64,000 nt of DNA from Paramoeba atlantica (GCA_977017575.1 CDRNVI010000009.1:682001-746000), one strand, 5' to 3'. Counted from the first letter of the stretch, positions 1,990 to 62,520 are shown. Program-made: numbers and translations. Notes: a model not told the origin generated them from the letters alone.

Positions 1990-3603
1990 ATGTGTGTATA
2001 CTCTTATGGGGTCCTTCCGGAAGGGAATCATCTTTCGCATACTCGAACCCGCGAAACACAACCTGATTCTAAAGAAAACTCTTTCTACGTTGAGGAACCT
2101 GTTAGCAAGGACACTCCGCTCTCCAATTTAGGTCGTTCGCTATGTCACCTTTCTCACTTTTTCGTCGTAGAAAATTTGCTAGAATATTGTGAACCTAAGG
2201 AACTCTGTGTTCTTTCGTGCACAAACAAATTATGGTACACACTGACGCATGCTGATGCTCTCTGGCGTAAGTTATATTGCATTGGCTATGTGAACGAAAA
2301 AGAAAAGTCTGCTCTCAAACACAATCAAAAAAATCTCAAAAATTTGCAAAGTCTTACCCTACAAAATCTTACCGGGCGAAATCGTGAAACGTTTTGGAAA
2401 ACTCTCGTAACGGGCCAACCTCATGTGCCCCTCTCGGTTTCCGGAGTATACAGCGATTATTTATTCCACTTGTGGCGATGCGCCGCAACCGACCCCTCCA
2501 CTTATTTAACAGAACAACGACGCCACACCGGTAAAACACTCCCCCAAGTCCCCGCCCTCCACGTCACCCAACTCCCTCCCCCCCAATTCACCGAGCACTA
2601 CGAAAAACCCAACACCCCCGTCATCCTCCGCGGGGCCGTACAACACTACTGGCCCCACCTCTCCCCCCTCTCCACCCCCGCCCACCTCCCCGCCCACCTC
2701 CCCGCCCTCCACAGCCCCGAGCGTCTCCTCCAGTGTGAGTCCCTCTCCCTCTCCCTCCCCGCCTACCACGCCTACCTCCACACCCCCACCCTCCACGGGG
2801 AGCGCCCCTTCTATCTCTTCGACCCCCATGTCCTTACCGGTGTGAACCTCTCCCTCCCGCATTTCCCCCAGGACTACTTCTCCGTGCTCGGGGAATCCGC
2901 CCGGCCCCACCATCGGTGGCTCGTGGTGGGGCCAACAAGAAGCGGGAGCAGTTTCCACACCGACCCGAACGGGACCAGCGCGTGGAACGCGACCCTTCGG
3001 GGACGTAAGTGGTGGCTGTTCTTCCCCCCGGAAGGTAGAGACCCCCCCGGGGTGGTGCGTAGCCCCGACGGGGTCGAGCTCGCCACCTCGCCCAGTTTAA
3101 TGGAGTGGGTGATGACGTACTACCGCGGGGTGGTGGAGGCGTATGGCACGGCTCCGGGGAGGGGGGGGATACAAAGAGGAAAAAAGAGGAGGAGCCGTGT
3201 CGCAGCGTCGTGGGGTGGGGCAACAAGGTCGCGTGTGATGTGTTGCGAAGCGGAGACGAGGACGGGGGATGTTCTTTTTGTCCCTTGTGGGTGGTGGCAT
3301 ATGGTGGTTAATCTCGAGGAAAGTATCGCGTTTACGGAGAATTATGTGGGGGATTACAACCTGCGGTATGTGTTGCGTTTTCTACATGCCTCTCCGAGGG
3401 GTATTACCGGGTTGAATGGGGTAGATGATGACTCAGAGAGTGATGCGGCAGAAAGGAAACGCGCGGAATTTTACAAAAAGTTTAGTAAAGCACTGAGGAA
3501 ACGGTTTCCTTCAATGAGTCCTTTGATTGACGAAGAAAATAGCGTGAAACCGTGTTCTCGTGTTGCTCCATTACTAGTGTCCGATACGCCCTTCGAATTT
3601 TGA
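1990..3603 (+). CDS. F-box + JmjC-domain protein (JMJD6-like oxygenase)
   Basis: F-box-like LLEYCEPKELCVLSCTNKLWY; JmjC motifs RWLVVGPTRSGSSFHTDPNGTSAWNA, GRKWWLFFPP, GDVLFVPCGWWHMVVNLEESIAFTENY. Confidence 0.88.
   Translation: MCVYSYGVLPEGNHLSHTRTRETQPDSKENSFYVEEPVSKDTPLSNLGRSLCHLSHFFVVENLLEYCEPKELCVLSCTNKLWYTLTHADALWRKLYCIGYVNEKEKSALKHNQKNLKNLQSLTLQNLTGRNRETFWKTLVTGQPHVPLSVSGVYSDYLFHLWRCAATDPSTYLTEQRRHTGKTLPQVPALHVTQLPPPQFTEHYEKPNTPVILRGAVQHYWPHLSPLSTPAHLPAHLPALHSPERLLQCESLSLSLPAYHAYLHTPTLHGERPFYLFDPHVLTGVNLSLPHFPQDYFSVLGESARPHHRWLVVGPTRSGSSFHTDPNGTSAWNATLRGRKWWLFFPPEGRDPPGVVRSPDGVELATSPSLMEWVMTYYRGVVEAYGTAPGRGGIQRGKKRRSRVAASWGGATRSRVMCCEAETRTGDVLFVPCGWWHMVVNLEESIAFTENYVGDYNLRYVLRFLHASPRGITGLNGVDDDSESDAAERKRAEFYKKFSKALRKRFPSMSPLIDEENSVKPCSRVAPLLVSDTPFEF
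2480..3430. other. C/A-rich to G/T-rich skew-switch island 1 (switch near 2900)
   Basis: Hand count at 2641-2700 gives 40 C vs 4 G; G-runs dominate from about 2930 to 3420. Lies inside the JmjC CDS. Confidence 0.8.
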
Positions 3604-3901
3604 TTCAGGGGCAATGCATATCTGGCAATCCCAATTATTGATGTCACAATGAAAGCGGAATCATATACCCGTTTAACATACCCCCCGGGATGTTGTCAAG
3701 GTATAGGTATGTTATCTAGGTATAGGTATGTTGCTTTTAATATTCGCGACATTGAGCAGTGGAGTGAGGGCACGTGCTCGTGAAGGTTTTAAAAACGTAG
3801 GAGAAACTCGTTTTGTGCGAGGATTGCATGCTAGTGATGCATCTTCTGGGTATCAATCTCTGCAGTTAAACTGCATGAATATCATATCTAGTGAAGAAAT
3901 A

Positions 3902-4665
3902 CAGGGGCGGTTGTTGATCTTGCCCCCTCTTGAGAAATTTTAATTTTTTTTATCCGTTTTCGCTTATCTTTGCAGCATTGAAGAGATCTCGTTCCCCTAG
4001 CGAAGCTCTTTGCCGCCTTTTTTTCATAGAGACCCTCTGATGCCCCCTGGGTTGAAAAACACAGTTTTTTTGGGATTTTTTTTGTGCACACAACCATTTT
4101 TTCCCCGCACTTTCATGTTTTTGTGGTTTATTTGAATGTGTATAAGCTTAAATAGACCTCTAATTTCTTTATGCTCAAGCAATATTTCAGTAGAAACAAC
4201 AATAGCTGCTTAATAGAAATTTTCAAACCTCAACAACACGAATACAAGACCGACTAACCCTAAAAGTGGTGAATATGTAGAAGGGTGGAAAGAAATTGGC
4301 AAAAATACCCCCTAATTTCGCACAGAAGAAAAAGGGTTAAACTCCATTGATTCGGTTTGCAATAGGCTTCGAAACATACTGCAAAACAGTGGAGGATCTT
4401 CTGGATATTGATTCGTTGTGGTCTTCTTCTAGGACAAACATTTTTTTTGTTGAAATCATGTTTTCTGAATATGATTAAAAATCCAAAATTTCCGATTTTT
4501 GTCAACTTTCGAGTCGCCGACAGGGCATCAGCGGGTCTCTATGAAAAAAAGGCGGCAAAGAGCTTCGCTAGGGGAACGAGATCTCTTCAATGCTGCAAAG
4601 ATGAGCAAAAACGGATAGAAAAATTAAAAATTCCCAGGAGGGGGCAAGATCAACAACCGCCCCTG
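3902..4665. mobile_element. Non-autonomous Tc1/mariner-type MITE, about 145-bp TIRs, TA TSD
   Basis: TA|CAGGGGCGGTTGTTGATCTTGCCCCCTC ... GGGGCAAGATCAACAACCGCCCCTG|TA; 3902-4047 is the reverse complement of 4520-4665; no internal coding capacity. Confidence 0.88.
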
Positions 4666-4755
4666 TAGAAAAGAGAAGAAAAGCACTTTCACTGTTAGAA
4701 CCTATACTGAACGATATACCGCGCGTAGTACTAAATAATAAAATGTGTTAGAATA

Positions 4756-6803: not shown

Positions 6804-8018
6804 GGTGGGATTGAACGAATAATGTACACTTTTTTTAAATAATTTTAAATTTTTATGAAATCCTTTTTTGTGTTTCCTAGGGTGATATGTATGAATTTTT
6901 TGGATTATTAGTCAATTTTTATCTTAAAATTACGGCTAGTATTGCTTCTCTAAGGTTTCAATGAACTGCACAGGTTGCCCTCGTTTTGATTGCGCTGCTC
7001 AAATTCGCTTGACTTCAGTCGGCTCTGCCGCAGAGGAAACGTGTATGTTGTGGATGCGAAACTACAAACTCACTGTACAAAGCGTTTCCTGCGAGCGTGG
7101 GCATGAGCGGGTACTGTGTAATCTGAAGGGAGGCAAGTTCCACTGCCCAGTACGCTCCTGCCGCAATTTGATGTCACAGGACGGTCCTCTCAAGCACTCA
7201 AAGACAAAGGTGTCCGCAAAGCAGATTCTAATTGGGATCGTTTCCTTTTCTTATAGCATGCTGGGAACAGAAGTTGCAAAGGAAGAAGAAGTCTCTCAAA
7301 GAACTGTAGTTTTGCAACGCCAAATTATCGAAAAATCATTGTCTGAGGTTCATAAAATCCGTCAGCGGAACGCCGAGGGAACAGTATCCTTTATGCAAGT
7401 CGATGAGACGTGGTTCTCAAAGATCAAGCGAGGGGGAAACAACCGAAACCAGCGGGTACGCGCTGGTGGTAGCCAGATAGTTCAGACTCTGGCCGAATGT
7501 ACTCGTGACAGCAAGCTGACAGAGATACATGTCACGCCTGTGCCTCAAAAAAGCGCAGAACACTTAATTCCCCCCATCGAGGCTATGTGTGCCTCCTCGC
7601 GTACGCGGATCCATACCGACGGGGCCAGGCACAACAATTTTCTTGAAGGAAAGTATCAATGGGATTCGGTTATCCACAGAAATGAGTGGATCAGTGATTC
7701 CGGTGTGCACACTAACACCGTAGAAGGAGCAAACAGCATGTTGAAGAGAACTTTGACGCGTTGTGGCGGCCAACTTGGTAGAAGCAATGAAAACCGGCAT
7801 GAGCGTGTGCGCGCCCTGGCAGAAAAATGTAACGGATCTCTACGGGTGAATGGAGCAAATGTTTTGAAGCGAGTTTTGGAGGATCTTCGCGTGTATTGTG
7901 CGCATTATGTTCTGCAGTAAGAAGCATTTTTTTTGTTAGATAATGATCGAAGGGAAAATATCGTCTTTTTAAAAATTCTGAAAACTGAAATTTTGTACAT
8001 TATTCGTTCAATCCGACC
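6804..8018 (+). mobile_element. Structurally intact Merlin (IS1595/IS1016-like) DNA transposon
   Basis: 25-bp TIRs GGT(G/C)GGATTGAACGAATAATGTACA at 6804-6828 and 7994-8018; perfect 8-bp TSD AAGTATAC at 6796-6803 and 8019-8026. Confidence 0.95.
6961..7920 (+). CDS. Merlin/IS1595-family DDE transposase
   Basis: N-terminal Cys/His zinc-ribbon-like region; MQVDETWF, RIHTDGA and VIHRNEWISDSGVHTNTVEGANSMLKR motifs; uninterrupted 319 aa. Confidence 0.93.
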   Translation: MNCTGCPRFDCAAQIRLTSVGSAAEETCMLWMRNYKLTVQSVSCERGHERVLCNLKGGKFHCPVRSCRNLMSQDGPLKHSKTKVSAKQILIGIVSFSYSMLGTEVAKEEEVSQRTVVLQRQIIEKSLSEVHKIRQRNAEGTVSFMQVDETWFSKIKRGGNNRNQRVRAGGSQIVQTLAECTRDSKLTEIHVTPVPQKSAEHLIPPIEAMCASSRTRIHTDGARHNNFLEGKYQWDSVIHRNEWISDSGVHTNTVEGANSMLKRTLTRCGGQLGRSNENRHERVRALAEKCNGSLRVNGANVLKRVLEDLRVYCAHYVLQ

Positions 8019-11103: not shown

Positions 11104-11329
11104 ACGACCTACATATTTACGAAAGACAGGATTTCTGAGAAGGGGTGTCGGGGGGAACATAAGTTGAGTCAACATTGTGTTAATTTTTGAGGTTAACAAG
11201 TAAGGGGGATTATACTCTTTTGCCATGAATCCTTTTCCGAGTACTATAGTGATAGGCTTTGGCAAAACAAAGGGCTGATGGACACTTTCAGAAAGAATAA
11301 ATAAATTGTTGATTCTTAGAGATTTAGAT

Positions 11330-11460: not shown

Positions 11461-11663
11461 ACTCGTAGGATTAATTTACAGTCATGATTATTTATGAATT
11501 GAATGTCTTATTTATGAAAGTTTATAAATTATTCCTAGAAATGTTTTTATGGTTCGGTTAGTTTTGTTCTTGCAACTAGTAGTAGTATACATGTAATTCT
11601 TCACAGCGAAATAGATCCTTTTTCCATTCTTTAACATGCTGTCTGATACGCTCTCAATATAAT

Positions 11664-12800: not shown

Positions 12801-12959
12801 AATACAAAGATAAGATGACTTGCACACACTTCACCTCGGCATTTATTCCATCTCAAGGAAGTTTCGCAACATTTCGGAACCAAGCTCGTTATTAAGGTGT
12901 GTCAGATTTACCTCACACTTACCTTTCTTCCTCTCTTTTATCCTTTTTTCCGGATATCC

Positions 12960-13690
12960 AATTCTCGCATTATTCCTCTCTCCAACCTCTACCACTTTCC
13001 TCCACCCTCACCCCCTCCCCCCATGGACACCCCCATCCACAAATACTACGTCGGCACGCAAACCACCCGGGACCAAGCCCACCGGTTCATGGACCGCGCC
13101 CTACGGGACTACGCCCCCACGCTCCTCACCATTGTCGACGAGTTTGCAAAGCCCGCGACGGGAACCGGAGATAAGCACTTCGACTCAAAAACTGAAATGT
13201 CTCCCTCCCCCCCCAGACTGCCGTATCTTCCTCTGGTCGTGGCCGTGACCCCCCCGGGGGTTGTGCGGGATGTGCTCAACACGTTATGGGGGGTGCAGTC
13301 CCCTCCCGGGGATGGGGCCATGGCCCCGGGGCGTGCCGAACTGAACCCCGAGGCCCTGGAGGGGCTGCTGCGGCGCCACCCCGAGCGCGGCTCGGAGGTC
13401 CGGGAACTGTGTGTCCTGTTAGCGAAGTTTGCCGCGTCCGGGGTGCGGGTGTTCTTTGTGTGGACCACCGACGGGGCGCTGCTTCCGGTGGTGGGGGGGA
13501 GCGGGGGGGAGGGGGGGGAGGAGGGGGAGGGGTGGGAAAAGCTCAGCGCGCGGGATGTTTCGCGGTTGACGGGGATTATGAATCGGGTGCTGGCGGCGGA
13601 GGGGAGGCGGATAACGCCGAAATCGTAGGAAGGGCGGGGAGGTTGTATTTTTTGAGGGGCGTTCATCGTGGTGGGGATGGCAAAGAATGT
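12960..13690. other. Skew-switch island 2 (switch near 13240)
   Basis: C-rich 12980-13220; hand count at 13501-13560 gives 38 G vs 6 C, with G4-like runs. Confidence 0.8.
13023..13628 (+). CDS. Hypothetical protein (201 aa from ATG 13023)
   Basis: Coding-strand ORF MDTPIHKYYVG... with globular-looking composition; no family recognised. Confidence 0.6.
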   Translation: MDTPIHKYYVGTQTTRDQAHRFMDRALRDYAPTLLTIVDEFAKPATGTGDKHFDSKTEMSPSPPRLPYLPLVVAVTPPGVVRDVLNTLWGVQSPPGDGAMAPGRAELNPEALEGLLRRHPERGSEVRELCVLLAKFAASGVRVFFVWTTDGALLPVVGGSGGEGGEEGEGWEKLSARDVSRLTGIMNRVLAAEGRRITPKS

Positions 13691-13769
13691 GAACGGAAGT
13701 AAACATTTACGTGAGTTTAAGGCATGTATATTCACCATTTAGACGTTAGATCTAATTTATAAAAACAGT

Positions 13770-24214: not shown

Positions 24215-25080
24215 GTTGACCCCCCTTACTTACATACTCCTCCCTCCTCAAAAAAAAGTCCTTCGTTATCCTATCTTGCTCTTCCCCCCTCCCCCATGCG
24301 CCCCTCCCTCCCCCTCCACGCCCGTGTATTCAACATGGGAACGCGCCCGGTGAACCCCACCACCCTTGCCGCGGAGAACACCCACAAGCAACGCCACGGG
24401 GCTCGTGTGGACGCCATCAAGCGTTCCCTCACCATGTTCCTGGACGACCCCGCGGAGCTCTCCCGGCACTGCTCCGGGCTCCCTGGGGTGCGGTTCTCCA
24501 GTGAGCTCCCCGCGGACCCGTTAACCCGGCTGTTCTTTCAAGTTAAAGGACACCAGGCGCTCTACCAGACCTCGTTTGAGGAGGAGAACGGGAATTCGTT
24601 TTCTAGAGTCCAGGATCACACGAGTATGGATGGGGACCGGCCCACACTGCGTACACGACCGCGGCTACCGGTGTATGACATGGGCGCTCGACTGATGGAG
24701 GCTACGGAGCGGATGAAACGCTTTGTGGTGGTCCCGAGTACTGTGGAGACTCGTGGGGTGGCTCGGATTATGCACTACCATGGGATCATCGCCGGGATGC
24801 GGGATTTTAACAACCGCCGGGCGTTCGCGGTTGAGCTGAAGTACTACCAGGGCGCTGGGGTTTTGCAGTTCTTTACTGCGGTGCGATGCAATGAGGAGAC
24901 CAATGAGACGGAGTGGTCCCCGATGATGGTACGGAGGCTGGCGTCCTCGACCGCCGCGGGGGCGATACGCATTGTGTGCGTGCGCGCCTGGGATGGGAGG
25001 ATTCTAGACCAGTTCCAGGCAATGAAGGAGGGAATCGGGGGGACGGGGTTGTGTATGATTCATTGAAGGTGGAGTGCGTA
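24215..25080. other. Skew-switch island 3 (switch near 24600)
   Basis: C-ending codons in the 5' half of uS8m, G/T-ending codons in the 3' half. Confidence 0.78.
24296..25066 (+). CDS. uS8m: Mitochondrial ribosomal protein uS8m, kinetoplastid type
   Basis: S8 fold pattern PVYDMGARL..VVVPSTVETRGVARIMHYHGIIAGMRDF..RAFAVELKYY..QAMKEGIGGTGLCMIH with an N-terminal extension as in trypanosomatid uS8m (recalled). Confidence 0.8.
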   Translation: MRPSLPLHARVFNMGTRPVNPTTLAAENTHKQRHGARVDAIKRSLTMFLDDPAELSRHCSGLPGVRFSSELPADPLTRLFFQVKGHQALYQTSFEEENGNSFSRVQDHTSMDGDRPTLRTRPRLPVYDMGARLMEATERMKRFVVVPSTVETRGVARIMHYHGIIAGMRDFNNRRAFAVELKYYQGAGVLQFFTAVRCNEETNETEWSPMMVRRLASSTAAGAIRIVCVRAWDGRILDQFQAMKEGIGGTGLCMIH

Positions 25081-25269
25081 TAATACATGGTATCTTACAT
25101 AGGGGTGATCAGAAAACTATAAATATTAGCACCTGATTTACGGTGTTCAGGAACGTAATATTAAAAATCATTGGGCTAATAATCGGTTATGATTTCACGC
25201 TTGTACTTCTGACTATAAAATGCATCAATAGTTAGTCACGGCGAACTACTCGACGGCCGAAACGTGAAC

Positions 25270-31310: not shown

Positions 31311-34043
31311 ATGCCGCGATTGCTAATTCCCAAGTGCTCCTTTCCGAGCCCTATCCGCGTGCTCCTGTGCTTAACCCTTTTCTTGTCCGCTACTCGGGCA
31401 CCCCCTAGAACGGGAATCGGTAACCCTCTCCCCACCCTCACCCCACGCATTTCTCTTCCCCCCATCACCGCCGCCGAGGTCCAACCCCGACACCACCAAC
31501 CCCCTCGTGAGACTCACCCGCACCGCAGCCCCACCTTCGCCCTCCCCCCCGCCCATGTCACAAACCTTACCCGTTCCTACGAGTCCTACCTGCAACCCCA
31601 CCCGGGGAGCCTCGAAAATGCGTCCTCTCTCCCCTACGCTCATCCGCTCACCCACCCCTCCCATGGACCCTCCCGTGGCAGCGCGGACCCCCAGCCCCCA
31701 CCCCCCCTACGTTGGCTCCCCCCGCGTGAGACCCTTGCGGGCTATCCTAACCCACAAAGCCGTGGGAATGGGAGTAGCCGTAGCCGTAACCCCCGTGATC
31801 CCTATCCCGAATCCCACACAGGCGCCCCGAATCCCCCCGAGGCGTACAGCCCCGCGCGGGGCGCCTACCCGTGGCCCGGGCCTCCGTTGTACCGTGTGCC
31901 GTACCCTACCCCCTGTGGTTCGTCTCCTGAGTCGGTGGATGAGACCATGATAAAAGGGGGGCACGGGGGAAGCTCGGAAGAGACAGCGTCCCATCCTTTT
32001 TTGAAACGGTATGCTGCTGCTACTGTGGCAGTGGCGAACACTACGGCAGCTACGACAAGTACAAGTCGTAGTACAACGAATCAAGAAGGGGAGGCTGTGA
32101 AGGTGGCTCGACCTACCGCCCATTTGCCCTCTCCGCGTAATCCCCCGTATTCCCCGTTTGCGGATGTCCCGGTGGGTACGACCCCGGAGAACCCCGGGAG
32201 TCGGTTTCTTTCGCGAGCCCCGAGCCCCGCGACCTTGGGGGGTTCCGCGGGGGGAAATCTCGCGGGTACCCCTCGTCGTACCATGACGGAGGAGGAGCTG
32301 GAGGTACGGCGCGAGCTGGCTGCGATTTTCAACCTCGAGCAAGCCCCCTGCCCGTCGCCGTTGCCCGATCAGGAGTACGGGGAGCAGTGTATGGGGAAAA
32401 AGGGAGCCGGGTCGTGTCCCACAGGGTACGCGAATCCGTTTCCTCAATATGTGAAGGAGGGAAAGTACGGGGAGAATCCTCCGATGGTTTATCCCGCCCC
32501 GCAACACCTTCCGCTGGGAAAAGATGAGGCCGAGGAGGGGGACGCGATGCAGCATCTTCTCCACGCCCTGGCCGAGGAGGCGGTCGCGACCCATGCCGCG
32601 GAGTACCCCGTGAGTCCGCACAGCTTTCGTACCCGGATGGATGCCCCCGCCAAGATCCTACGTGACTCCCTGGACAATGCCCGGGCCCGGAGCTGTCACG
32701 TGGTAAGCCCCCTCGGGACCCACCCGCCCGAAATGGACCCCGCGGTGGGGTACCTCGTAGAGGCCGTCTCCCAGCGCCTTAGCCAACCCTTTGACTACCG
32801 TCTGAAAGCGAAGGAGACGCCCAGCGGGCAGGCCTACGTGATCCAGAACGGGTCCTGGGGGGTGTGGCAGCGCGTCCACGAGTACTTCTACCCCAGCCAG
32901 GTTGCCCTGTTCAAGCCGCTCGCCCAGGAGCGCGGCAACGCGGTCAACCCGCAGGGACGAAAGAACCTCTACGGCGGGGGGGACGGCCACTGCGTGTTCC
33001 CCTCCGGGGAGTTCTACCTGCGGGATGCGGTGGCGTACGCGCTGGACCAGCACAGTGCCGGGGTGTTCCACATCCCGGTGACGACGGTGTCCCACATGGA
33101 GGGACTCGGGGAGGGGGTGCTCTCGGAGTATATTACCCCTGCGAATTCCGATGCCACCCCCCATTTGGGATTGGAACGTACCCGGGCGCGACAATTTCGG
33201 CTGTTGTTTGATCTGTTTTTTATGAACGGTGACGCTCGAAGGGAGCCGATGTTTGGGAAGAATCTGTGGGCTACACGGCATAGTCCCGGGGAACGGCCCG
33301 AGCCGGATGGGGTGGAGGAGGAAGGCTCCATGACCGGAGGGAGCGGTACGCGAGGAGGCCGCACGCCGTTGCCTCAGGGTCGTACGGGGCACTACTACTT
33401 ACACAACTCCTACATCTTACCGGAGACATTTCCACGGTATGATGAGCTTATTGCGAGTTTTCGAAATGCCTACGGGTGTGGTCGGACCCCTGGAAAAGGG
33501 ACGCCGGGAAGTCAAGATGGTCGTGGCTCCGTTCCCAATGTGAGCGCGGGCTCCGAGGATAGTGACGCCTACGAGCTCGAGTCCTGGCACCCCGATGTGT
33601 TGCGCTTCCTGAACTCGATTGAAGACCCATGGTACAAGTACTACTCCGTACTTCGTCGGTTTGGATTCTCCTCGCAGACAATTTCGCGAGTCGCGTTGTC
33701 GGTGTATACTGTGCAGCGCTGTGCGGCGTCGGGCTTAACTCCGGACGAGATTGTACACTTTGCTTATACCTCTGCTCACCCCTTTATGCCTTTCGTGTTT
33801 CGGTTATTATCGGGGCTGGAGAAAGGGGTGGGGACTCGGGAACAAGTGTTGCGTGCTCCCCAAGTCATTCATCGAGTGTTGGAAGGATCTTTACAGGCGT
33901 TTAAGCGAGAGACAGCGTCGAATTCTCACGAGCAGGGTTCCGCCAGGTCGAAGTCCTATTTTTCCCTGTTTTCAAGGGAAAAAGTACCAGAATCCCATGG
34001 GAGTTATTATGACTTACAGCGTAAAGCAGATGGATGGTGGTAG
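31311..34043 (+). CDS. Signal-peptide PI4K type II-like (pseudo)kinase, paralogue 3
   Basis: RVLLCLTLFLSA; ALFKPLAQERGNAVNPQG, RDAVAYALD, FHIPVT, GVLSEYI, FMNGDAR, LHNSYILPE, SGLTP motifs. Confidence 0.82.
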   Translation: MPRLLIPKCSFPSPIRVLLCLTLFLSATRAPPRTGIGNPLPTLTPRISLPPITAAEVQPRHHQPPRETHPHRSPTFALPPAHVTNLTRSYESYLQPHPGSLENASSLPYAHPLTHPSHGPSRGSADPQPPPPLRWLPPRETLAGYPNPQSRGNGSSRSRNPRDPYPESHTGAPNPPEAYSPARGAYPWPGPPLYRVPYPTPCGSSPESVDETMIKGGHGGSSEETASHPFLKRYAAATVAVANTTAATTSTSRSTTNQEGEAVKVARPTAHLPSPRNPPYSPFADVPVGTTPENPGSRFLSRAPSPATLGGSAGGNLAGTPRRTMTEEELEVRRELAAIFNLEQAPCPSPLPDQEYGEQCMGKKGAGSCPTGYANPFPQYVKEGKYGENPPMVYPAPQHLPLGKDEAEEGDAMQHLLHALAEEAVATHAAEYPVSPHSFRTRMDAPAKILRDSLDNARARSCHVVSPLGTHPPEMDPAVGYLVEAVSQRLSQPFDYRLKAKETPSGQAYVIQNGSWGVWQRVHEYFYPSQVALFKPLAQERGNAVNPQGRKNLYGGGDGHCVFPSGEFYLRDAVAYALDQHSAGVFHIPVTTVSHMEGLGEGVLSEYITPANSDATPHLGLERTRARQFRLLFDLFFMNGDARREPMFGKNLWATRHSPGERPEPDGVEEEGSMTGGSGTRGGRTPLPQGRTGHYYLHNSYILPETFPRYDELIASFRNAYGCGRTPGKGTPGSQDGRGSVPNVSAGSEDSDAYELESWHPDVLRFLNSIEDPWYKYYSVLRRFGFSSQTISRVALSVYTVQRCAASGLTPDEIVHFAYTSAHPFMPFVFRLLSGLEKGVGTREQVLRAPQVIHRVLEGSLQAFKRETASNSHEQGSARSKSYFSLFSREKVPESHGSYYDLQRKADGWW
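31370..33500. other. Skew-switch island 4 (main switch near 31950, second weaker cycle at 32.6-33.4 kb)
   Basis: C-runs at 31420-31720 and G-runs at 32150-32600 and 33060-33400 within paralogue 3. Confidence 0.7.
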
Positions 34044-34931: not shown

Positions 34932-35291
34932 TTTCGCTATCTCCGAAATGTGTGAAAAACGCAACGTGGAGAGGAAGCACTTCTACTAATTGGCATTTAT
35001 TTCGGTTTTACATTGATGCTCTCAGGAGTCAACATTTCAAATGATTAGTAGACGTAGTCAGATGATGTCAGAACAATATTGGTTAAATGCTTTTGAACAC
35101 CAGTGGTACCCTATATTTTTTCAGAGTTAGTGTTTTTTGAGAGCGTATAATTATGAATCTAATTCTTCTGACTCGCAAAATAGAAACAAGAAGTCTTGCA
35201 TCTTTCTTTAAACTCAACTATGTAAAATATATCCCGACGAGCCGAACTCTACACCTTGATAGCTAGCAAAGCGCCAACCCTTTGTTCCTCC

Positions 35292-36572
35292 ATGTTTGAC
35301 AACAAAGTAATTGCCGCCCCTATGGTACGCGTCTCCCATCTTGGCTTTCGACAACAATGCGCTTACTATGGAGCTCAGGTCGTATTCACCGAGGAAATCA
35401 TGGCGCCGCGACTAATGAAGGCGACTCGAGAGGTTGTTCCCTCCCACATTCTCCCGATCTACCAATCTGCGCTCTCCGAGGCCTGTGGTACGGAATCTAA
35501 AGAGATTTCTAAAGATTCTTGTCAACTCGATTATCTCATTCCCCCCTGCTCTGCATTACTGCGGGACCGCGTTGAGTATGTTGTCTACGAACCTGTCGGG
35601 AAGAAAGCCAATAAAACGGTAAAACGAGTCCCAGTGTTCACCACGCTTCTCGGAGGGGAAGCTGTTCCTTTAATTCTGCAACTCGCGGCCAGTAACGCTG
35701 AAACCGCCCTGGCTGCGGCAAGACTCGTCCAGCACGACGTGCAGGGGATTGATTTAAATATGGGGTGCCCGAAACGATCCGCCACAGGGAGTGGGATGGG
35801 AGCGGAGCTGATGAAACATCCGGAGAGAGCGTGTGAGATTCTTTCTACGCTGGTACAAAATATCAAAGTCCCGATTAGTGTAAAGACAAGATTATGCGAG
35901 ACCGATGAGCAGAGTGTTGCGTTGATTCGGCAACTGGCGGAGACCGGGGTACATGCGGTGACACTCCATGCACGAACTGTGGAGCAGCGTAGCTCCACAG
36001 AGGCGCTACATTGCAGATTCCGCGTGATTCGAGACGCTCTGGGGGGAGATTTTGCTCCTTCACTGATTTTAAATGGAGATGTCATGCCACGAAAGTTTGA
36101 TCAGCTACGGCACGAAACGCAGTGTTCAGGGGTTATGGTTGCGAGGGAGGCTTTTTGGGATCCTATGGTTTTTACCGAACACATGGGGCAGGGTTTGCCT
36201 ACGCAAACAGAAGGTCGAGATTCTGAAGATTTGAAGATTGTCCAAACAATGCTTTGTTGGCATCTTGCTTTTCACACACCCTTTTCTGCGATAAAGTATC
36301 ACGTATGCAGAGCAATGCAGGAGCAAAACATTTGCAAAGGAATACTTGCTGCGGCAACGTCGGCACGAACACCCCCTGACTTGTGTTGCGCACTATACAT
36401 GTTTTCCAGTGCCGAAGTCAGTGATAACAAAAACGTTCTTTATACTCCCACGTTGTTTGGATTACACATTCCTTTATTTCTTCTCATCAATGCATATAGA
36501 GAACCTAAACAAATTGTAGAAGCACCTGAAGCATACGTGTATCCACCGTCGTACGGGGTACCTACGAATTGA
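35292..36572 (+). CDS. DUS2: tRNA-dihydrouridine synthase (DUS2-like)
   Basis: APMVRVS..FR, TEEI, ILQL, GIDLNMGCPK, PISVKTR, LHART, ILNGD motifs. Confidence 0.88.
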   Translation: MFDNKVIAAPMVRVSHLGFRQQCAYYGAQVVFTEEIMAPRLMKATREVVPSHILPIYQSALSEACGTESKEISKDSCQLDYLIPPCSALLRDRVEYVVYEPVGKKANKTVKRVPVFTTLLGGEAVPLILQLAASNAETALAAARLVQHDVQGIDLNMGCPKRSATGSGMGAELMKHPERACEILSTLVQNIKVPISVKTRLCETDEQSVALIRQLAETGVHAVTLHARTVEQRSSTEALHCRFRVIRDALGGDFAPSLILNGDVMPRKFDQLRHETQCSGVMVAREAFWDPMVFTEHMGQGLPTQTEGRDSEDLKIVQTMLCWHLAFHTPFSAIKYHVCRAMQEQNICKGILAAATSARTPPDLCCALYMFSSAEVSDNKNVLYTPTLFGLHIPLFLLINAYREPKQIVEAPEAYVYPPSYGVPTN

Positions 36573-45112: not shown

Positions 45113-45339
45113 TTTAAGTGCCACCTCCTATAATTATTCTAGAATTTTATAGAATTTTTCACCCCCTGGCCTGTCTCGGAGGTAGGACGTACAGCCTGTA
45201 GGTCAACAAACTTTGCAGAGGATGGATTTTTACAGCTAAAGGAATGGAATTATCAAATTCATATGTACCTTCTGCATTGCTTATTTTAGAACACGCGGAG
45301 AATAAGAAGAATATACTCACCACGATTCCACTATTTCTG

Positions 45340-46340
45340 ATAACGACGCCTTTTCCTCTTCTCGTTTACCCTTTCATCCATGTCCCACTTCATTAACGGG
45401 TACCCCGTCCCCGAACGGCTAACCGAAAAGCAAATCCGATCCCTATTCCCCAAAGGCATCCTGGGCCTCACCACATCCTCCGGTATCCCCATCTTCCCCT
45501 CCCCCAACGGCGATCTCCTCCTCACCGCCGAGGAAACCCACTACACCCTCCCCGGGGCTAACTCCCTCCTCCCCCACCTCACCTCCACCGCCACCTCCGC
45601 CTCCACCCCCTCAAGCCCCACCCAGGACGACTCCCTCATCACCCCCCACGCCCAAGGACCACAACGGTTCTCCCAACAGTGGGCCCACAAGGGCAAGGTT
45701 CTCCAAGACCGGGTCCATGACCACATCACCATGCCCCCCCTCCTGATCACGTTTATTGACACCCCCGAGTTCCAACGGCTCCGTGGGCTGCGACAGCTCG
45801 GCTCCACCCACTACCTCTACCCCGGTGCCACCAACACCCGATTCGAACACTCCCTGGGCGTCGCCTTCCTCGGCGGCGTAATGGTACGACACATCCGGAA
45901 GCACCAGCCCGAGCTCCGGGTGGATTACCGTGATGAGATGGCCGTGATGCTCGCGGGCCTGTGTCATGATTTAGGACATGGCCCGTTCTCCCATCTGTTT
46001 GAGGAGTTTGTGAATCGCACAAGGGGTAGTCCGGGGAATAATAGTGGTGGTGGGAGTGGTACGTCCTTCCCACGATGGCGTCATGAGGATATGTCGGTCC
46101 GTGTGTTTCGGCATATTATACAAAAGCATGAGATTCGGTTTGAGGATTTTGGATTGCTGGAGGAGGACATACAGTTTGTGACACATCTGATTAAAGGGGT
46201 GAAGCCAGGACATCGGGCTCCGATGGGAAGCCGATCCGAGACGAAACGGTTCTTATTTGATATTGTCTCCAACAAGCGAAATGGGATAGATGTGGATAAG
46301 CTGGACTACTTTATGCGGGACAGTGCGTGTTGCTGGGGTC
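45340..46340. other. Skew-switch island 5 (switch near 45900)
   Basis: Third codon positions are almost all C through LGSTHYLYPGATNTRFEHSLG, then G/T after about 45900. Confidence 0.8.
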
Positions 46341-47239
46341 GCGTTGCTGTGGACTGTCACATCAATCGTTTGATTAAGTCAACCCGTGCGGTCAATTTCA
46401 ACAGTGAGTGGCAAATTTGCTTTGAGGAGAAAATGGCGCTGAGCCTTGGAGACATTTTCAGTCTTCGAGCGAAGTTGCACAAGTACGTGTACCAACACCG
46501 CATTGTGAAAGTAATTGACCACATGATTTTGAATGTCTTAGAGCTTGCGGAGGGTCACTACATGATTCTGGGCGGCGGGGGCCAGTCCTACAGTATCGGG
46601 GCATGTGTCGATGACATTGACGCGTATGTCCGCCTGGGTGACTGGATACTGGACGCCTTGGAGGCCTGCCCCTCGACGGCTCTTTTACCCGCTCAGGCGA
46701 TAATTTCCCGTATACGGGCCCGGGACTTCTACCACTTAGCCGGAATCGCGGCCTATCGCAGTGGGGAAGTACCTCGCGCGGAGATTGAGATTACGCATGA
46801 GATTTTAACCCATCTTCCACCACAGAGCACGGTGATAACGATGAGCGACGTGGTTGTTCACGTGACGCGCATCACGTACGGTAGCAGTGACCATCAGGGA
46901 GCCGCGGATGATCCCATAAGCCATGTAGGATTTTTTAACCCCAAAAAGAACCAAGACGAGGCATTTCACTTGAGTGCCAAGCGAAAAAGCCCTCTTTTTA
47001 CTCCCACAGCATTTGAGGAAAGTACAGTGTTTGTGTATGCCAAGGCTCCGGAGCATTTACTTCCAGTCACGCTAGCCTTTGAGGCGTGGAAAGAAGACAA
47101 TTGTGAACTTTTCTCAACCCCTGTCCCAACGATGAACTTTACGCCTAGTATGAAACGTCGAGCCCTGGAGTCATCTATTACACGGCGAGAGGTTGCGCAA
47201 ATGCAACTTTCTCAGCCCTCACTTACACCGCCCGAATGA
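45380..47239 (+). CDS. SAMHD1: SAMHD1-like HD-domain dNTP triphosphohydrolase (no SAM domain)
   Basis: IDTPEFQRLR..QLG..YPGATNTRFEHSLG, AGLCHDLGHGPFSH, HEDMS, DIVSNKRNGIDVDKLDY..RD, VYQH. Confidence 0.92.
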   Translation: MSHFINGYPVPERLTEKQIRSLFPKGILGLTTSSGIPIFPSPNGDLLLTAEETHYTLPGANSLLPHLTSTATSASTPSSPTQDDSLITPHAQGPQRFSQQWAHKGKVLQDRVHDHITMPPLLITFIDTPEFQRLRGLRQLGSTHYLYPGATNTRFEHSLGVAFLGGVMVRHIRKHQPELRVDYRDEMAVMLAGLCHDLGHGPFSHLFEEFVNRTRGSPGNNSGGGSGTSFPRWRHEDMSVRVFRHIIQKHEIRFEDFGLLEEDIQFVTHLIKGVKPGHRAPMGSRSETKRFLFDIVSNKRNGIDVDKLDYFMRDSACCWGRVAVDCHINRLIKSTRAVNFNSEWQICFEEKMALSLGDIFSLRAKLHKYVYQHRIVKVIDHMILNVLELAEGHYMILGGGGQSYSIGACVDDIDAYVRLGDWILDALEACPSTALLPAQAIISRIRARDFYHLAGIAAYRSGEVPRAEIEITHEILTHLPPQSTVITMSDVVVHVTRITYGSSDHQGAADDPISHVGFFNPKKNQDEAFHLSAKRKSPLFTPTAFEESTVFVYAKAPEHLLPVTLAFEAWKEDNCELFSTPVPTMNFTPSMKRRALESSITRREVAQMQLSQPSLTPPE

Positions 47240-58222: not shown

Positions 58223-59354
58223 CCCACTCGCACATTGATAATGCATAGTTACTGCACATTGATAATGCATAACGTACCGCACATTGATAATGCATATAGC
58301 ACATTAATAATGCATATAGCACATTGATAATGCATATAGCACATTGATAGTGCATACTAAGCGGCACATTGATATTGCATAGTTACTGCACATTGATAAT
58401 GCATATAGCACATTGATAATGCATATAGCACATTGATATTGCATACAGCACATTGATAATGCATACAGCACATTGATAATGCATACAGCACATTGATAAT
58501 GCATACAGCACATTGATGATGCATTGTTTGGAAATTAAAGGTGTTTTCAAGAAATAGTGAACACTCGTCTCTGCTCCCGGTGAGGCCCCGGAGTTGCGAG
58601 AGGCCTCCATACCCCACAACTACCACCTTCCCCCCCTATTTAGCGGGGGTCGCGCGAGCGACCCCTGATAAATGGGGGGAAGGTGGTAGTTGTTTTGGGG
58701 AATATGAGAGGCCGAACGCACGGAGGGGCCGGCCGGGCCAATGAACCCAGACACCATACCCAACCCCTAGCAAAGCCTAGACCTTGTTTACCCGTTTGCA
58801 AGACAAGAATGTGTGTCGTTAGTGGGAAGCAATTTGCGAAGTCGAAAGGCTGTGTGATATTAGTGTAACGCGCATAAGTACATGCCCGTGTATATAAAGG
58901 ACGCACATTTATGGATAAGAATCGGATGTCTTTGTCACTCTTATCAATGTGCTATATGCAATATCAATGTGCTATATGCATTATCAATGTGCTATATGCA
59001 TTATCAATGGGCTATATGCATTATCAATGTGCTATATGCATTATCAATGTGCTATATGCATTATCAATGTGCTATATGCATTATCAATGGGCTATATGCA
59101 TTATCAATGTGCTATATGCATTATCAATGTGCCGCTTAATATGCATTATCAATGTGCCGCTTAGTATGCATTATCAATGTGCTATATGCATTATCAATGT
59201 GCTATATGCATTATCAATGTGCTATATGCATTATCAATGTGCTATATGCATTATCAATGTGCTATATGCATTATCAATGTGCTATATGCAATATCGCTGT
59301 GCTATATGCATTATCAATGTGCCGCTTAGTATGCATTATCAATGTGCGGGCGCC
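58223..59354. mobile_element. Foldback-like element: inverted 20-bp satellite arrays around a 416-bp core
   Basis: Left array 58230-58524 (GCACATTGATAATGCATATA) and right array 58941-59347 (reverse complement); inserted into a family A hairpin arm with AGA duplicated (58220-58222 and 59355-59357). Confidence 0.8.
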
Positions 59355-60446
59355 AGAGCCTAAAAAAGAATTATTAATATATTATCAAAATTTTTTATTG
59401 GGCTTTAACACTCAGATTTCTCGCTCTTAATTTTGTATCAAACAATATTTTCATCCCGAAAAGGAGCATTGATGGGGATCTCCTTATGGAGTCGATGATG
59501 ATGCTTCCAGCATCATTATATACACCTCAACCTACGCGGGAAGTAGGTAGGAGCCTACGCCTGACGCAGGTAAATGGGCTGTACCAACGACAACTCCTTA
59601 TGAAGTGCTGATACCGAGGGCCGGGAAATGCCAAACTCTGTATTTGTGTGATGTGTAAAATGAGCTTTCTGGATCTCCTCGCAGTTTTCCCTGGTACTGC
59701 CACCATACTGCTGCAAATGACGCCGACCACATGTCGGGGCTCCTCCACATGCGAGGGGCTCCTCGTGTGTCACTCGCAGCCGCTCGTATAAATGCATATT
59801 GAATTATTAATAATATTAATGGGTACAGACCACTTATATTGCACCCACTTTCAAAATAATGATATGAATGCATTGAAATGTTTTCTTGCGCAGCGTAACT
59901 TCACACACTTTATCTCATTTCCTCCTTCCGCCTACTTTACGTCAAAAAAATGTTGCAGTATGCTTATAGTTCACCACATTACACGTCAAATGCCCATGCG
60001 CAGATAAAATGCCTGCGGGCAGATAAAATGCCACAATAAAAAAGCTTGGCGTCAGTGCCACATGGCAGTGGCGGGGAAGACCGCTAGGAGGTCCCATGTT
60101 GGACCATGCTGCCCCATGTTAGGGCTGTGGGAAATATTGAGAAGACTCCTAGTTTACCTGTCTGGAGGTAAGGCCCAACTTTGAACGTCTGTGAGCAAAG
60201 CCCAACTGTGGGTGTAGCCCTGAGACAGAATTATATTTTAGCGCCCCCGCGCACTGAAGGGAGTGGGGGCGCGTTCTCAGAACCAACGTTTGTCCCTTCC
60301 GCAGGATTGTGTACTTGTTTCCCTATGTTGTGTGACCGGGCGTGTGATCCAGTAGCTTTTTAGGTTATGCTGTCCACTTCAACTCTGTGGCACAGTTTGA
60401 CCCAAAAAATAGAAAAGTGGGTGCAATATAAGTGGGCATTACCCAT

Positions 60447-61383
60447 ATTAATAAACCCCCCACAGCGAATAAGTCACCCCCCTCTTTTTTTGGTACAACG
60501 AGGCTTAGGGGGGTTGCTGCACAACTTTTTCGTTCAAAATTTTGAGATCCGCACGTTCCCGCTGTTTTTAGACCTCTTCACAGATAACAAATTAAAACTC
60601 ATTTTTTTAATGAAGTTTTTGCATAGTCTTGCCAACATTACCTGAAAAATCTCATGTTCCTCGACCAGGGGGGGAGAAGGGGGTCAACATGAAAATGGTG
60701 TCACAGATCTTCGCTAGGGGAACGCGATCTCTCGATTGCAACAAAAATGATCATAAACAGATAACAAACATTCAATTTGTCACGTGGTGGAATATTTGTC
60801 TTTGATTGGTTCTTTCTTGAAACAGTGATAAATCAACTTTTTTAAGCTGTCCCCTTTACTTTTTGCTTGAAGGGGCCTAAGGGGGTTAGGATATCATTTT
60901 CTCGTTCAAAATTCTGAGATCTACACGTTCCCACCATTTTTAGATCATTTTAGAAACTGAAAAAAAAAATTGTTTTTAGGTTCTATTTTTTTGCATCGTC
61001 ATACCACACTAATTTAAGAAAACAAACACTCTGCGGACAGGGGGCACAAGTGGGTCAATATTAAAAATAGCGGCAAAGATCTTTGCTAGGAGAACGAGAT
61101 CTCTCGTTTGCAACAAAAATCAGCAAAAACGGACAGAAATAATTGATTTCCTCATGGGAGGAGAATATTTAATTAGTTAAAGTGTGAGAAATTGGTCTCT
61201 TGAAAAACGTGAAGAAAGTGATAATCCATCTATGGGATGCACGCATTTGAGAGTTTTGGTTCCATGCTATAACGCGCAAAATCTTTGTGTTGGGAACAGC
61301 AAAATGCAACAAAAATGAACTCAAACGGACACTTGACTGAAAAGTTAGAGAGGGTGACTTTTCGCTGTGGGGGGGTTATTAAT
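60447..61383. mobile_element. TIR element containing two diverged copies of about 370 bp related to the 3902-4665 MITE TIR
   Basis: ATTAATAAACCCCCCACAGCGAATAAGTCACCC vs the reverse complement of 61352-61383; GCTAGG.GAACG.GATCTCTC at 60714 and 61084. Confidence 0.65.
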
Positions 61384-61499
61384 AATATTAATAATTTGAT
61401 TTTTTGAAATAATGATAATTATTATTACAAAAATTATTATTACAGCTATGTTTCGCACAACTCTATTCATCGCTTCATGAAAGCCATAAAATCGTAAAA

Positions 61500-62520
61500 A
61501 AAGACATTCACTCCACACTCCCACAACAAACCAACATATTTTTTCAACCTTCCCCCCATGAAACTCTCCTCGTACACCCTCTACAGTCTCCTCGCCACCC
61601 TGGCCTACATCGTCCACACTGCCTACTCCACCCACCCCACCGCGGCCTACTTCCCCACCGCCCTCGCCCTCACCCGTTCGAAACCCTTTGCCGCGCTCAC
61701 CGCCAACAACGCCCTCCTCGCCGCCCTCTGGGGTTTCCTCCTCACCCGTCGCCTTCTGCTCGGAACCGTACGCGACCACGAGGGGGAGGGGGTCGCGGAC
61801 ACCGTCACCCTCCACGCCCTGCAATCCCTCTTCGCGCTGTCCTATTTCGATTTCCACCTTACCGCAGGTCTCGCCGCGGTGCTTCTCGGGACCGCATTCG
61901 CGAAAGCGCTCCATTTGCTCGCGCACGCCCGGGGCGACACGATTGAGTCCAGTGCGGAGACCAACCCGCGGGAGGTGTTGCGGCTATCCCTGTGTTTGAG
62001 TTTTCTTCTCCATGCCGCGGTGCGGATGTTGCTGTACGCCACGGAGGTGATTCGAAACGAGGGGTGCTGTGTGTGGGTGGTGATAGCCCTGGATTGGGCC
62101 CTGATGTTGGTGGCCGCGACCGGGATCTCATTAAGGCTGATGTTGCACATCGCGGATCGAAGATTTCACCGTTCAAGTATTGCCGCGAAGTATTATCTTA
62201 CGTTAGGGTGTACCTTAGTGGCGTGTGTGCTGGAGCTTGTGTTTTTTGCGGTGCTGTTCCAGCATGTTGGGGTTCCGGTGCATTTACTGCGGGAGCTTTA
62301 TCTAACGATTCGTGGCCTGATGCAGACCCTGCGACGGGTGTTGGTGTATCGCACGCATTGTAGGGTTGTGCGGGAGTGTGAGGTTCCGCAGGAGGATGAG
62401 ATTGCAAAGGATCCGAGTTGTGTGATATGTATGGAGGAGATGACCGGGGGAGGGGTATCTGGGAGCTGTACCACACGAAAGCTTCCGTGTGGTCATGTGC
62501 TACACACGGAGTGCTTGTAC
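61500..62520. other. Skew-switch island 6 (switch near 61950)
   Basis: C-rich 61500-61870 and G/T-rich 61960-62500 within HRD1. Confidence 0.8.

What the first reader, a model, noticed from the sequence alone, without database searches (positions are those of the whole stretch)
2480..62520. Periodic C/A-to-G/T skew-switch islands overprinted on coding sequences (candidate origins or internal transcription start regions)
Seen: six GC-rich islands of about 1-2 kb with switch points near 2.9, 13.2, 24.6, 32.0, 45.9 and 62.0 kb. Each is C/A-rich on the left and G/T-rich on the right (40 C:4 G at 2641-2700; 38 G:6 C at 13501-13560). The flip occurs at synonymous sites inside conserved domains (JmjC, uS8m, HD, HRD1), so it is imposed at the DNA level; between islands the skew relaxes. 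Five of the six begin at a gene 5' end, several just after TE clusters. Inference: the polarity fits single-strand exposure at a bidirectional replication origin or bidirectional Pol II initiation (GT-rich promoter elements are described in T. brucei), and is opposite to what resected double-strand breaks would give. Both halves can form G-quadruplexes on opposite strands. I do not know of this being described for this lineage.
Basis: partly seen in the sequence, partly recalled or inferred. Interest (0 to 1): 0.82.

Follow-up and report, generated by a model that had tools for sequence, protein, structure and literature searches.

The report
GC-rich strand-skew flip islands in genes
About one gene in four in this kinetoplastid-like genome carries a 1-kb GC-rich patch whose silent codon positions switch from almost all C to almost all G. 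This is a DNA-level footprint of some two-way process such as replication start, and it could allow such sites to be mapped from sequence alone.

Summary
Six islands of about 1 kb (GC 0.60-0.73) flip from GC skew about -0.6 to +0.6 at 2914, 13307, 24573, 31723-31913, 45865 and 61901. At fourfold-degenerate sites the left arms reach 27-28 C of about 30, and the right arms up to 29 G of 32; the background is about 21-22% each.

The change is strand-specific AT→GC. In left arms only pyrimidine-ending twofold codons gain GC (C 82%). In right arms only purine-ending ones do (G 79%). Amino-acid composition and UTRs shift too, so it is not codon or protein selection.

A rebuilt second contig of the same genome (50 kb) has six more islands. 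Left edges lie 43-121 bp upstream of an ORF's ATG in 9 of 12 islands (chance about 0.15 each). Two islands are mid-gene.

"Periodic" does not hold: spacing on the second contig is 2-26 kb, and about 78 kb of transposon-rich DNA has no full island.

A SNP-dense haplotype block ends within about 30 bp of island 2's flip point (n=1).

The mechanism is unresolved. My ranking:
- fixed replication-initiation sites, 0.33
- divergent Pol II initiation, 0.22
- recombination hotspots, 0.18

The scan's first readers noted the same pattern in many other windows of this genome.

The parts
2480..3500 (.). Island 1. C/A-rich arm 2480-2914, flip at 2914, G/T-rich arm 2915-3500. It lies mid-gene in the F-box/JmjC ORF 1990-3603 (+) and both edges are gradual.
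   Evidence: GC up to 0.70 and skew -0.65 to +0.50. Fourfold sites run 1:27:1:1 and then 1:10:16:2 (A:C:G:T). Pfam hits.
12902..13700 (.). Island 2. The C arm starts 121 bp upstream of the ATG at 13023, the flip is at 13255-13307, and the G arm runs through the stop (13628) into the 3' UTR. It covers the whole small ORF 13023-13628 (+).
   Evidence: GC to 0.73 and skew -0.60 to +0.62. The last 50 codons have fourfold counts 0:1:29:2. The SNP block ends at 13279.
24219..25150 (.). Island 3. The C arm starts 77 bp upstream of the uS8m ATG (24296), the flip is at 24573, and the G arm runs to the gene end (25066).
   Evidence: uS8m identity (T. brucei 6hiv, E 3e-50).
31330..33400 (.). Island 4, broad and compound. 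C arm 31330-31900, flip at 31723-31913, G arm to about 32500, then a second weaker flip near 32950. It lies in ORF 31311-34043 (+), which has no Pfam hit.
   Evidence: (S 0.33 and 0.18). Five canonical G4 motifs on the minus strand at 31424-31815.
45317..46400 (.). Island 5. The C arm starts 63 bp upstream of the ATG (45380) of a SAMHD1-like HD dNTPase gene. The flip at 45865-45917 falls inside the conserved HD core. The G/T arm runs to about 46400.
   Evidence: fourfold sites 3:27:2:1 and then 3:5:10:6. Alignment to SAMHD1 over aa 93-558.
61491..62560 (.). Island 6. The C arm starts 67 bp upstream of the HRD1 ATG (61558) at an abrupt edge against 29%-GC DNA. The flip is at 61901-61930 and the G/T arm runs to about 62560.
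   Evidence: fourfold sites 0:28:5:2 and then 3:2:17:6. Pfam TPR_SYVN1_N covers aa 4-269 and so spans both arms.
35256..36200 (.). A weak island of the same polarity at the 5' end of the Dus gene (35256-36572 +), with a flip near 35560.
   Evidence: S 0.20; fourfold sites go from 6:11:2:6 to 5:5:14:3.
900..1595 (.). A weak island of the same polarity in the 3' part of the Not1 ORF, with a flip near 1300.
   Evidence: fourfold sites run 2:12:4:6, 5:11:5:7, then 5:9:11:3 and 5:3:9:2.

Best explanation
Each island is the accumulated DNA-level footprint of a process that starts at a fixed point and runs about 0.5 kb both ways. On each side, the strand that leaves the centre 5'→3' gains G at the expense of A and T. 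GC therefore rises, and the plus strand reads C/A-rich and then G/T-rich.

The process I think most likely is replication initiation at fixed, efficient origins. This would be an extreme local form of the origin 'S-jump', in which error-prone or biased synthesis and repair close to the start site drive local GC gain, skew and G-runs.

The start point usually lies about 250-500 bp inside the 5' end of a gene. The upstream arm is cut off at the AT-rich intergenic spacer.

Shown here: the composition, its strand logic, the override of codons and amino acids, the recurrence, and the anchoring to gene 5' ends.

Inferred: that the process is replication initiation, and that it acts by mutation or repair bias rather than by selection.
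For: - The polarity is C/A→G/T in all 12 islands.
- The arms are roughly mirror-like, at 350-700 bp each.
- The gain is strand-specific AT→GC. Twofold Y-ending codons are C 82% in left arms but R-ending G is only 43% there. In right arms R-ending G is 79% and Y-ending C 38%. Background is 46% and 45%.
- G3+ runs are enriched 3-6 fold on the strand leaving the centre.
- Leishmania major's constitutive origins show the same local negative-to-positive G/T skew switch and the same G4 strand arrangement, even inside one-way transcription (PMC7511235).
- At human constitutive origins, initiation-linked mutagenesis was modelled to produce a local GC rise, skews (S-jumps), CpG islands and G4s, with breaks at origin centres (PMC9645720).
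- The SNP block ending at island 2's flip fits breakage at the centre.
- There are no full islands in about 78 kb of transposon-rich DNA.
Against: - The amplitude (skew about 0.6, fourfold sites about 90% one base) is far beyond any replication skew I know of.
- No significant replicon-wide skew lies between islands. Fourfold GC skew goes from +0.07 to -0.03 with a standard error of 0.05-0.1.
- Nothing in origin biology explains why 9 of 12 left edges sit 43-121 bp upstream of an ATG. It also does not explain why the upstream arm is shorter, sharper and stronger than the downstream one.
- GC at fourfold sites decays only downstream, from 0.51 to 0.38. That polarity follows transcription.
- Spacings of 2 kb and of 26 kb both occur.
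Confidence: 0.33

Rival explanations
1. The islands are divergent RNA polymerase II initiation zones, like miniature kinetoplastid transcription start regions. G/T-rich sequence on each outgoing sense strand promotes directional initiation and open chromatin. The sense arm tails off downstream and the antisense arm is short.
For: - In T. brucei, GT-rich elements of 210-416 bp on the coding strand drive orientation-dependent transcription and H2A.Z deposition (PMC5579346).
- Divergent start regions there give the same plus-strand polarity.
- The islands are tied to gene 5' ends.
- The downstream arm is longer and the GC tail runs only downstream.
- Two islands follow repeat-rich gaps that could be unit boundaries.
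Against: - Flip points lie 244-485 bp inside coding sequence, for example in the HD catalytic core. The host gene could then only be expressed by read-through from upstream.
- The 'antisense' arm is the stronger one, although every gene is on one strand.
- Outside the islands the coding strand has almost no skew (background), so transcription as such leaves little mark here.
- There are no tRNA genes or other known landmarks of internal start sites.
- GC gain is not a known feature of trypanosome start regions.
Confidence: 0.22
2. The islands are recombination-initiation hotspots at gene 5' ends, meiotic or mitotic. [quoted passage not shown]
For: - AT→GC gain overrides synonymous and amino-acid sites, which is the hallmark of biased gene conversion.
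- The islands prefer gene 5' ends, as hotspots do in eukaryotes without PRDM9.
- Island strength forms a continuum.
- They are absent from transposon-rich DNA.
- A 1.7%-SNP block (38 differences in 11000-13279) gives way to zero differences over 3.6 kb, within 30 bp of island 2's flip.
Against: - Biased gene conversion as known enriches G and C on both strands. Here the twofold-codon test shows gain of only one of them per arm.
- The known mutational asymmetry at human meiotic breaks has the opposite polarity (PMC7615360).
- My own heteroduplex model gives the observed polarity only if default repair favours restoration, which is not the usual case.
- Sex is not documented for this organism.
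- The haplotype boundary is a single case.
Confidence: 0.18
3. The pattern is a one-way, transcription-phase skew anchored at a start site just upstream of the gene. The coding strand is C-biased in the first 350 nt or so and G-biased afterwards, as in genes of many fungi and at plant start sites, but far stronger.
For: - The left edge is abrupt and lies 43-121 bp upstream of the ATG in 9 of 12 islands.
- The right-hand decay is gradual.
- Short genes are covered end to end with the flip in the middle (island 2; the RPE gene on ctg3794l).
- Fungal genes show 5' C-bias and 3' G-bias that affects fourfold sites, amino acids and UTRs (PMC3315797).
Against: - Two islands (JmjC, fumarase) lie mid-gene with gradual, symmetric edges and no nearby in-frame start.
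- In long genes the G arm ends after about 1 kb and not at the 3' end, so it does not scale with the transcription unit.
- Only about a quarter of genes are affected.
- The GC enrichment has no counterpart in the fungal pattern.
Confidence: 0.12
4. The pattern is selection on the proteins, on codon usage or on an mRNA hairpin: low-complexity Pro/Ser/Thr-rich then Gly/Val/Arg-rich segments, translational ramps, or C arm pairing with G arm.
For: - Amino-acid composition does shift. First and second codon positions are C-rich in left arms and G-rich in right arms.
- Some arms encode low-complexity N-terminal extensions.
- The two arms are complementary in composition.
Against: - The effect is strongest at fourfold sites inside conserved domains.
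- It extends into UTRs and spacers.
- A ribosomal protein gene nearby (eS30) has no island.
- Folding energies of three islands equal those of locally shuffled controls (z -0.4, -2.2, +0.7).
Confidence: 0.02

Closest known systems
Local G/T-skew and G4 polarity switch at the constitutive (MFA-seq) origins of Leishmania major (Damasceno et al. 2020, PMC7511235)
   Same: It is in a kinetoplastid. The switch is local, from negative to positive G and T skew. G4s lie on the reverse strand upstream and on the forward strand downstream. It is seen even where flanking transcription is one-way.
   Different: In Leishmania there is one site per chromosome, between transcription units, coincident with kinetochore and base J marks. 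It was measured in 1-kb windows and is much milder. Here there is one island per 2-26 kb, inside coding sequence, with a strong GC rise and near-saturated silent sites.
Origin S-jumps and initiation-linked mutagenesis at human constitutive origins (Murat et al. 2022, PMC9645720; Touchon et al. 2005, cited there)
   Same: The skew jump is upward at a fixed initiation site. There is a local GC rise, G4 and CpG enrichment, and breaks at the centre. The features are attributed to mutation rather than to selection.
   Different: Human skews are small and origins are defined experimentally. Here the amplitude is about 0.6 and no replication data exist.
GT-rich dispersed promoters and divergent transcription start regions of Trypanosoma brucei (Wedel et al. 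2017, PMC5579346)
   Same: G/T-rich sequence lies on the outgoing coding strand, elements of a few hundred bp are enough, and the action depends on orientation. The lineage is related.
   Different: The T. brucei elements lie at unit boundaries over several kb of mostly non-coding DNA and are not reported as GC-rich overprints of codons. Here the flips are inside genes of a one-way array.
Opposite GC skews at the 5' and 3' ends of fungal genes (McLean and Tirosh 2011, PMC3315797), and C>G skew at plant and fungal start sites (Fujimori et al. 2005, PMC555766)
   Same: The coding strand is C-biased at the 5' end and G-biased later. The bias affects fourfold sites, amino acids and UTRs. Many genes but not all are affected.
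   Different: The fungal effect is weak, scales with the gene and carries no GC enrichment. Here the module has a fixed length of about 1 kb and extreme amplitude, and some copies are mid-gene.
GC-rich footprints of biased gene conversion (e.g. gerbil Pdx1 and runaway GC regions, PMC6573468 and PMC7403616; the 5' GC gradients of grass genes, from my own knowledge)
   Same: There is local AT→GC gain strong enough to change conserved amino acids. It prefers gene 5' ends and decays downstream.
   Different: Those footprints are not known to place G on one strand and C on the other in mirror fashion around a centre.

Membership tests
Replication-origin skew jump (S-jump) | Upward jump of G-C and T-A skew (C/A-rich to G/T-rich) at the initiation site | tested here: met
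   All 12 islands share this polarity. The keto skew follows it.
Replication-origin skew jump (S-jump) | The skew persists, declining, across the replicon to the next termination zone | tested here: inconclusive
   Fourfold GC skew between islands goes from +0.07 to -0.03. The direction is right but the change is within error.
Replication-origin skew jump (S-jump) | Nascent strands, ORC/MCM binding or a fork-direction switch at the site | not testable with these tools
   Only DNA and Hi-C-like runs and one tiny RNA run were available.
Kinetoplastid Pol II transcription start region / GT-rich promoter | G/T-rich elements on the coding strand in the direction of transcription | tested here: met
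   Right arms: G 52% and T 15% at fourfold sites, with T-ending twofold codons favoured. Left arms are the mirror image.
Kinetoplastid Pol II transcription start region / GT-rich promoter | Located at boundaries of polycistronic units (strand switches, head-to-tail gaps, often next to tRNA genes) | tested here: not met
   Flips lie 244-485 bp inside ORFs of a one-way array. There are no tRNA genes or Rfam hits. Only 2 of 6 islands follow repeat-rich gaps.
Kinetoplastid Pol II transcription start region / GT-rich promoter | Primary (5'-triphosphate) transcripts and H2A.Z/H2B.V or acetyl-histone enrichment | not testable with these tools
   No suitable data could be reached.
GC-biased gene conversion hotspot | AT→GC enrichment at silent and replacement sites within about 1 kb | tested here: met
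   Third-position G+C reaches about 28 of 30 codons in the peaks. Codon positions 1 and 2 are shifted as well.
GC-biased gene conversion hotspot | GC gain without regard to strand (both G and C rise) | tested here: not met
   In left arms, R-ending twofold codons are G 43% against 45% background. In right arms, Y-ending codons are C 38% against 46%.
GC-biased gene conversion hotspot | Recombination breakpoints concentrated at the site | tested here: inconclusive
   One heterozygous-to-homozygous boundary lies at 13279/13280, inside island 2's flip zone. Only one read-laying run was allowed.
Fungal-type 5' C / 3' G gene skew | The skew runs from the gene start to the gene end and is seen in a large share of genes | tested here: not met
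   The module has a fixed length of about 1 kb and the G arm ends long before the stop in genes of 500-900 codons. Only 5-6 of about 29 window ORFs are affected.
Codon-usage or protein low-complexity effect | The bias is explained by amino-acid content or by uniform preferred codons | tested here: not met
   The preferred silent base switches from C to G within one gene and inside conserved domains.

The most novel reading that the evidence does not exclude
A previously undescribed strand-specific AT→GC drive acts within about 0.5 kb of fixed initiation points anchored about 300 bp inside the 5' ends of a quarter of the genes of a kinetoplastid-like flagellate. It places G on the strand leaving the centre. 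It is strong enough to saturate silent sites and rewrite amino acids of housekeeping enzymes. If so, the genome carries a sequence-readable map of its initiation sites, whether replication origins or recombination or transcription starts.
Probability: 0.3. Interest if true: 0.88.

Novelty: new variant of a known kind. Interest (0 to 1): 0.72.

Why it matters
How kinetoplastid-type genomes choose where to start replication and transcription is an open problem, because consensus sequences are lacking. Here the sites of some bidirectional DNA process seem to be written into the sequence at base-pair resolution, with a very large signal. They occur hundreds of times per genome according to the scan's other notes.

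Any single mapping experiment could be scored directly against thousands of predicted flip points. Suitable experiments are nascent strands, BrdU-nanopore, primary transcripts or a recombination map.

The islands also show a non-adaptive force that overrides protein sequence in conserved enzymes. That matters for codon-usage, phylogenetic and selection analyses in this lineage.

Tried and rejected
- **RNA evidence.** The only RNA-labelled run (X5) held almost nothing of the stretch. Runs X1-X4 are DNA, and X4 has GATC-ended fragments. No transcript ends could be read.
- **Sampling other loci through transposase relatives**. This mostly gave transposon-rich DNA without islands. One look-up returned an overlapping stretch.
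- **Search for paralogues of the LRR protein.** It found only the query itself.
- **Comparing two equal-length neighbouring ORFs on ctg3794l as paralogues.** They are unrelated.
- **Window versus ENA contig as two haplotypes.** They are 99.97% identical, so they give no haplotype information.
- **RNA hairpin between the arms.** There is no energy excess over locally shuffled controls. The first attempt timed out.
- **tRNA and Rfam scans.** Nothing was found.
- **A shared motif at the flip points.** None is apparent in the six centres, by inspection only.
- **Single-strand deamination as sole cause.** Rejected, because GC rises and C→T is at most slight.
- **Literature searches** for this pattern in bodonids or free-living kinetoplastids. 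Nothing was found.

Full report
**What is there**

The window is a one-way array of intronless genes, nearly all long ORFs on the plus strand, interspersed with DNA transposons. Its uS8m ORF matches the mitoribosomal uS8m of T. brucei, T. cruzi and Leishmania at E 1e-46 to 1e-50. The kinetoplastid affinity is therefore real, although the nearest database relatives of an aminopeptidase P were only about 40% identical.

Against a background GC of about 0.43, six islands of about 1 kb reach GC 0.60-0.73. GC skew swings from about -0.6 to +0.6. A left/right skew-difference statistic picks out exactly six sites at S>=0.3: 2914, 13307, 24573, 31723, 45865 and 61901. Every strong opposite-sign change is just the left edge of one of these islands. 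Block shuffles give 0.23 such sites on average.

**It is a DNA-level overprint, and it has a simple strand logic**

In the reading frames, third positions go from 26-28 C of 30 to 15-22 G of 30 within the same gene.

| Site class | Left arms | Right arms | Background genes |
|---|---|---|---|
| Fourfold sites | C 64% | G 52% | A 27, C 21, G 22, T 30% |
| Fourfold peaks | 1:27:1:1, 3:27:2:1, 0:28:5:2 (A:C:G:T) | 0:1:29:2 | - |
| Twofold Y-ending codons, % C | 82% | 38% | 46% |
| Twofold R-ending codons, % G | 43% | 79% | 45% |

The twofold codons are the most telling. The gain is AT→GC, but only toward C on the plus strand on the left and toward G on the plus strand on the right. Equivalently, the strand that leaves the centre 5'→3' gains G from both A and T.

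Plain cytosine deamination of an exposed strand would lower GC and make T-rich arms, so it cannot be the main driver.

First and second codon positions shift the same way. So do 5' UTRs and the 3' UTR of island 2. Conserved domains lie under the arms:
- Cupin_8/JmjC, uS8m and the HRD1 TPR domain.
- The SAMHD1-type HD core, with the flip inside the catalytic motif region.

Protein-level, codon-usage and RNA-hairpin explanations fail. Folding energies equal those of locally shuffled controls.

**Recurrence and distribution**

The scan's first readers flagged the same pattern in many other windows of this genome: 53 notes mention skew. I did not check those windows.

Instead I rebuilt 50,132 bp of another contig of the same assembly, ctg3794l, from loci L006 and L008-L011. 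It carries six more islands of the same polarity. They include ones on E1 dehydrogenase, fumarase, TCP1 and ribulose-phosphate epimerase genes.

Spacing there is 2.1-25.8 kb. The even spacing in the window (p about 0.007) is therefore not a general rule, and 'periodic' is not supported.

Four transposon-rich loci totalling about 78 kb have no complete island. Weaker islands of the same polarity also exist (Dus 5' end, Not1 3' part, patatin), so strength is a continuum.

**Relation to genes**

An algorithmic left edge lies 43-121 bp upstream of an ORF's ATG in 9 of 12 islands. A random position falls within 150 bp of an ATG with probability about 0.15, which gives a binomial p of about 5e-6.

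In those islands the flip is 244-485 bp inside the ORF; the island at the contig end (782 bp) has an edge clipped by the end of the data. The upstream arm is short, intense and abruptly bounded by AT-rich spacer. The downstream arm is longer, weaker and tails off. Fourfold GC between islands decays only downstream, from 0.51 to 0.38.

The two mid-gene islands (JmjC and fumarase) have gradual, roughly symmetric edges.

The module is therefore basically mirror-symmetric. It is preferentially placed so that its centre is a few hundred bp inside a gene's 5' end, and its upstream arm is clipped at the spacer.

**Reads**

Contigs of two DNA runs show the strain is heterozygous. There are 38 differences between 11000 and 13279, and none from 13280 to 16900. 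The boundary lies within about 30 bp of island 2's flip at 13255-13307. This is one case only, because read-laying was capped at one call. It does link an island centre to a recombination or loss-of-heterozygosity breakpoint. The RNA run was uninformative.

**Mechanism**

The polarity fits three centre-out processes.

(a) Replication initiation.
- Leishmania major's constitutive origins show the same local skew switch and the same strand arrangement of G4s, even within one-way transcription (PMC7511235).
- At human constitutive origins, initiation-linked mutagenesis was shown by modelling to generate a local GC rise, S-jump skews, CpG islands and G4s, with breaks at the centre (PMC9645720).

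(b) Divergent Pol II initiation.
- T. brucei GT-rich elements of a few hundred bp drive directional transcription (PMC5579346).

(c) Recombination initiation with GC-biased repair.
- This best explains the override of amino acids, the 5' preference and the haplotype boundary.
- Its known mutational asymmetry has the opposite polarity (PMC7615360), and biased conversion is not known to be strand-specific.

A fourth reading, edge-in, is a transcription-phase skew like that of fungal genes (PMC3315797). It fits the 5' anchoring but not the mid-gene islands or the fixed length.

I rank origins first (0.33), because they alone have precedents for GC rise, skew and G-runs together, one of them in this lineage. 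Weighing against them:
- The amplitude.
- The lack of a significant replicon-wide skew.
- The unexplained 5' anchoring.
- The opposite G4 arrangement reported for T. brucei SNS-seq origins (PMC13179062).

G4 potential is asymmetric. Canonical motifs occur on the minus strand in 5 of 6 left arms, but on the plus strand in only 1 of 6 right arms.

**Verdict**

This is a real, very strong, recurrent feature that searches of the held paper library did not find described for free-living kinetoplastids. I class it as an extreme, coding-sequence-overprinting variant of known initiation-site skew switches. The underlying process is undecided but directly testable.

Noticed in passing
window 11000-16900: The sequenced strain is heterozygous in blocks. 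Contigs of runs X1 and X2 show 38 SNPs in 11000-13279 and none in 13280-16900. Run X4 has a 9-bp in-frame insertion (GCAAAGCCC) after 13145.
   Followed up: partly
window 47890-49278: A Tc1/mariner-type element with 111-bp terminal inverted repeats (47890-48000 and 49168-49278) and a truncated transposase ORF at 48401-49045 (-). Related copies of 46-98% identity lie on other contigs of the same assembly.
   Followed up: partly
window 3936-4632: A MITE-like element with 110-bp inverted arms that are 95% complementary, just downstream of island 1. A related 99-bp segment recurs at 60692 and 61064.
   Followed up: no
window 58255-59427: Two arrays of a 20-bp repeat (GCACATTGATAATGCATATA-like) in inverted orientation, at 58255-58566 and 58895-59427. 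They form a long imperfect palindrome inside the repeat-rich gap upstream of island 6.
   Followed up: no
window 6961-7920 and 53221-53904: An IS1595/ISXO2-like DDE transposase ORF (+), and a SWIM-zinc-finger (MULE-like) ORF (-), both in an otherwise one-way gene array.
   Followed up: no
L006 6600-7240 (ctg3794l): A 640-bp array of a 20-bp G-rich, C-free repeat lies directly upstream of the TCP1 gene start. Read in the gene's sense it is G-free, and it prolongs the G-poor arm of that island.
   Followed up: partly
window 43729-44752: Two ORFs (43729-44370 and 44141-44752) overlap in different frames and have no Pfam hit. This may be a frameshifted gene or pseudogene. A small eS30 gene lies at about 42730-42924 and has no island.
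   Followed up: no
window 45380-45690: The SAMHD1-like protein has a Ser/Thr/Pro-rich N-terminal extension of about 100 residues that lies entirely in the C arm. Its composition looks like a by-product of the C drive.
   Followed up: no
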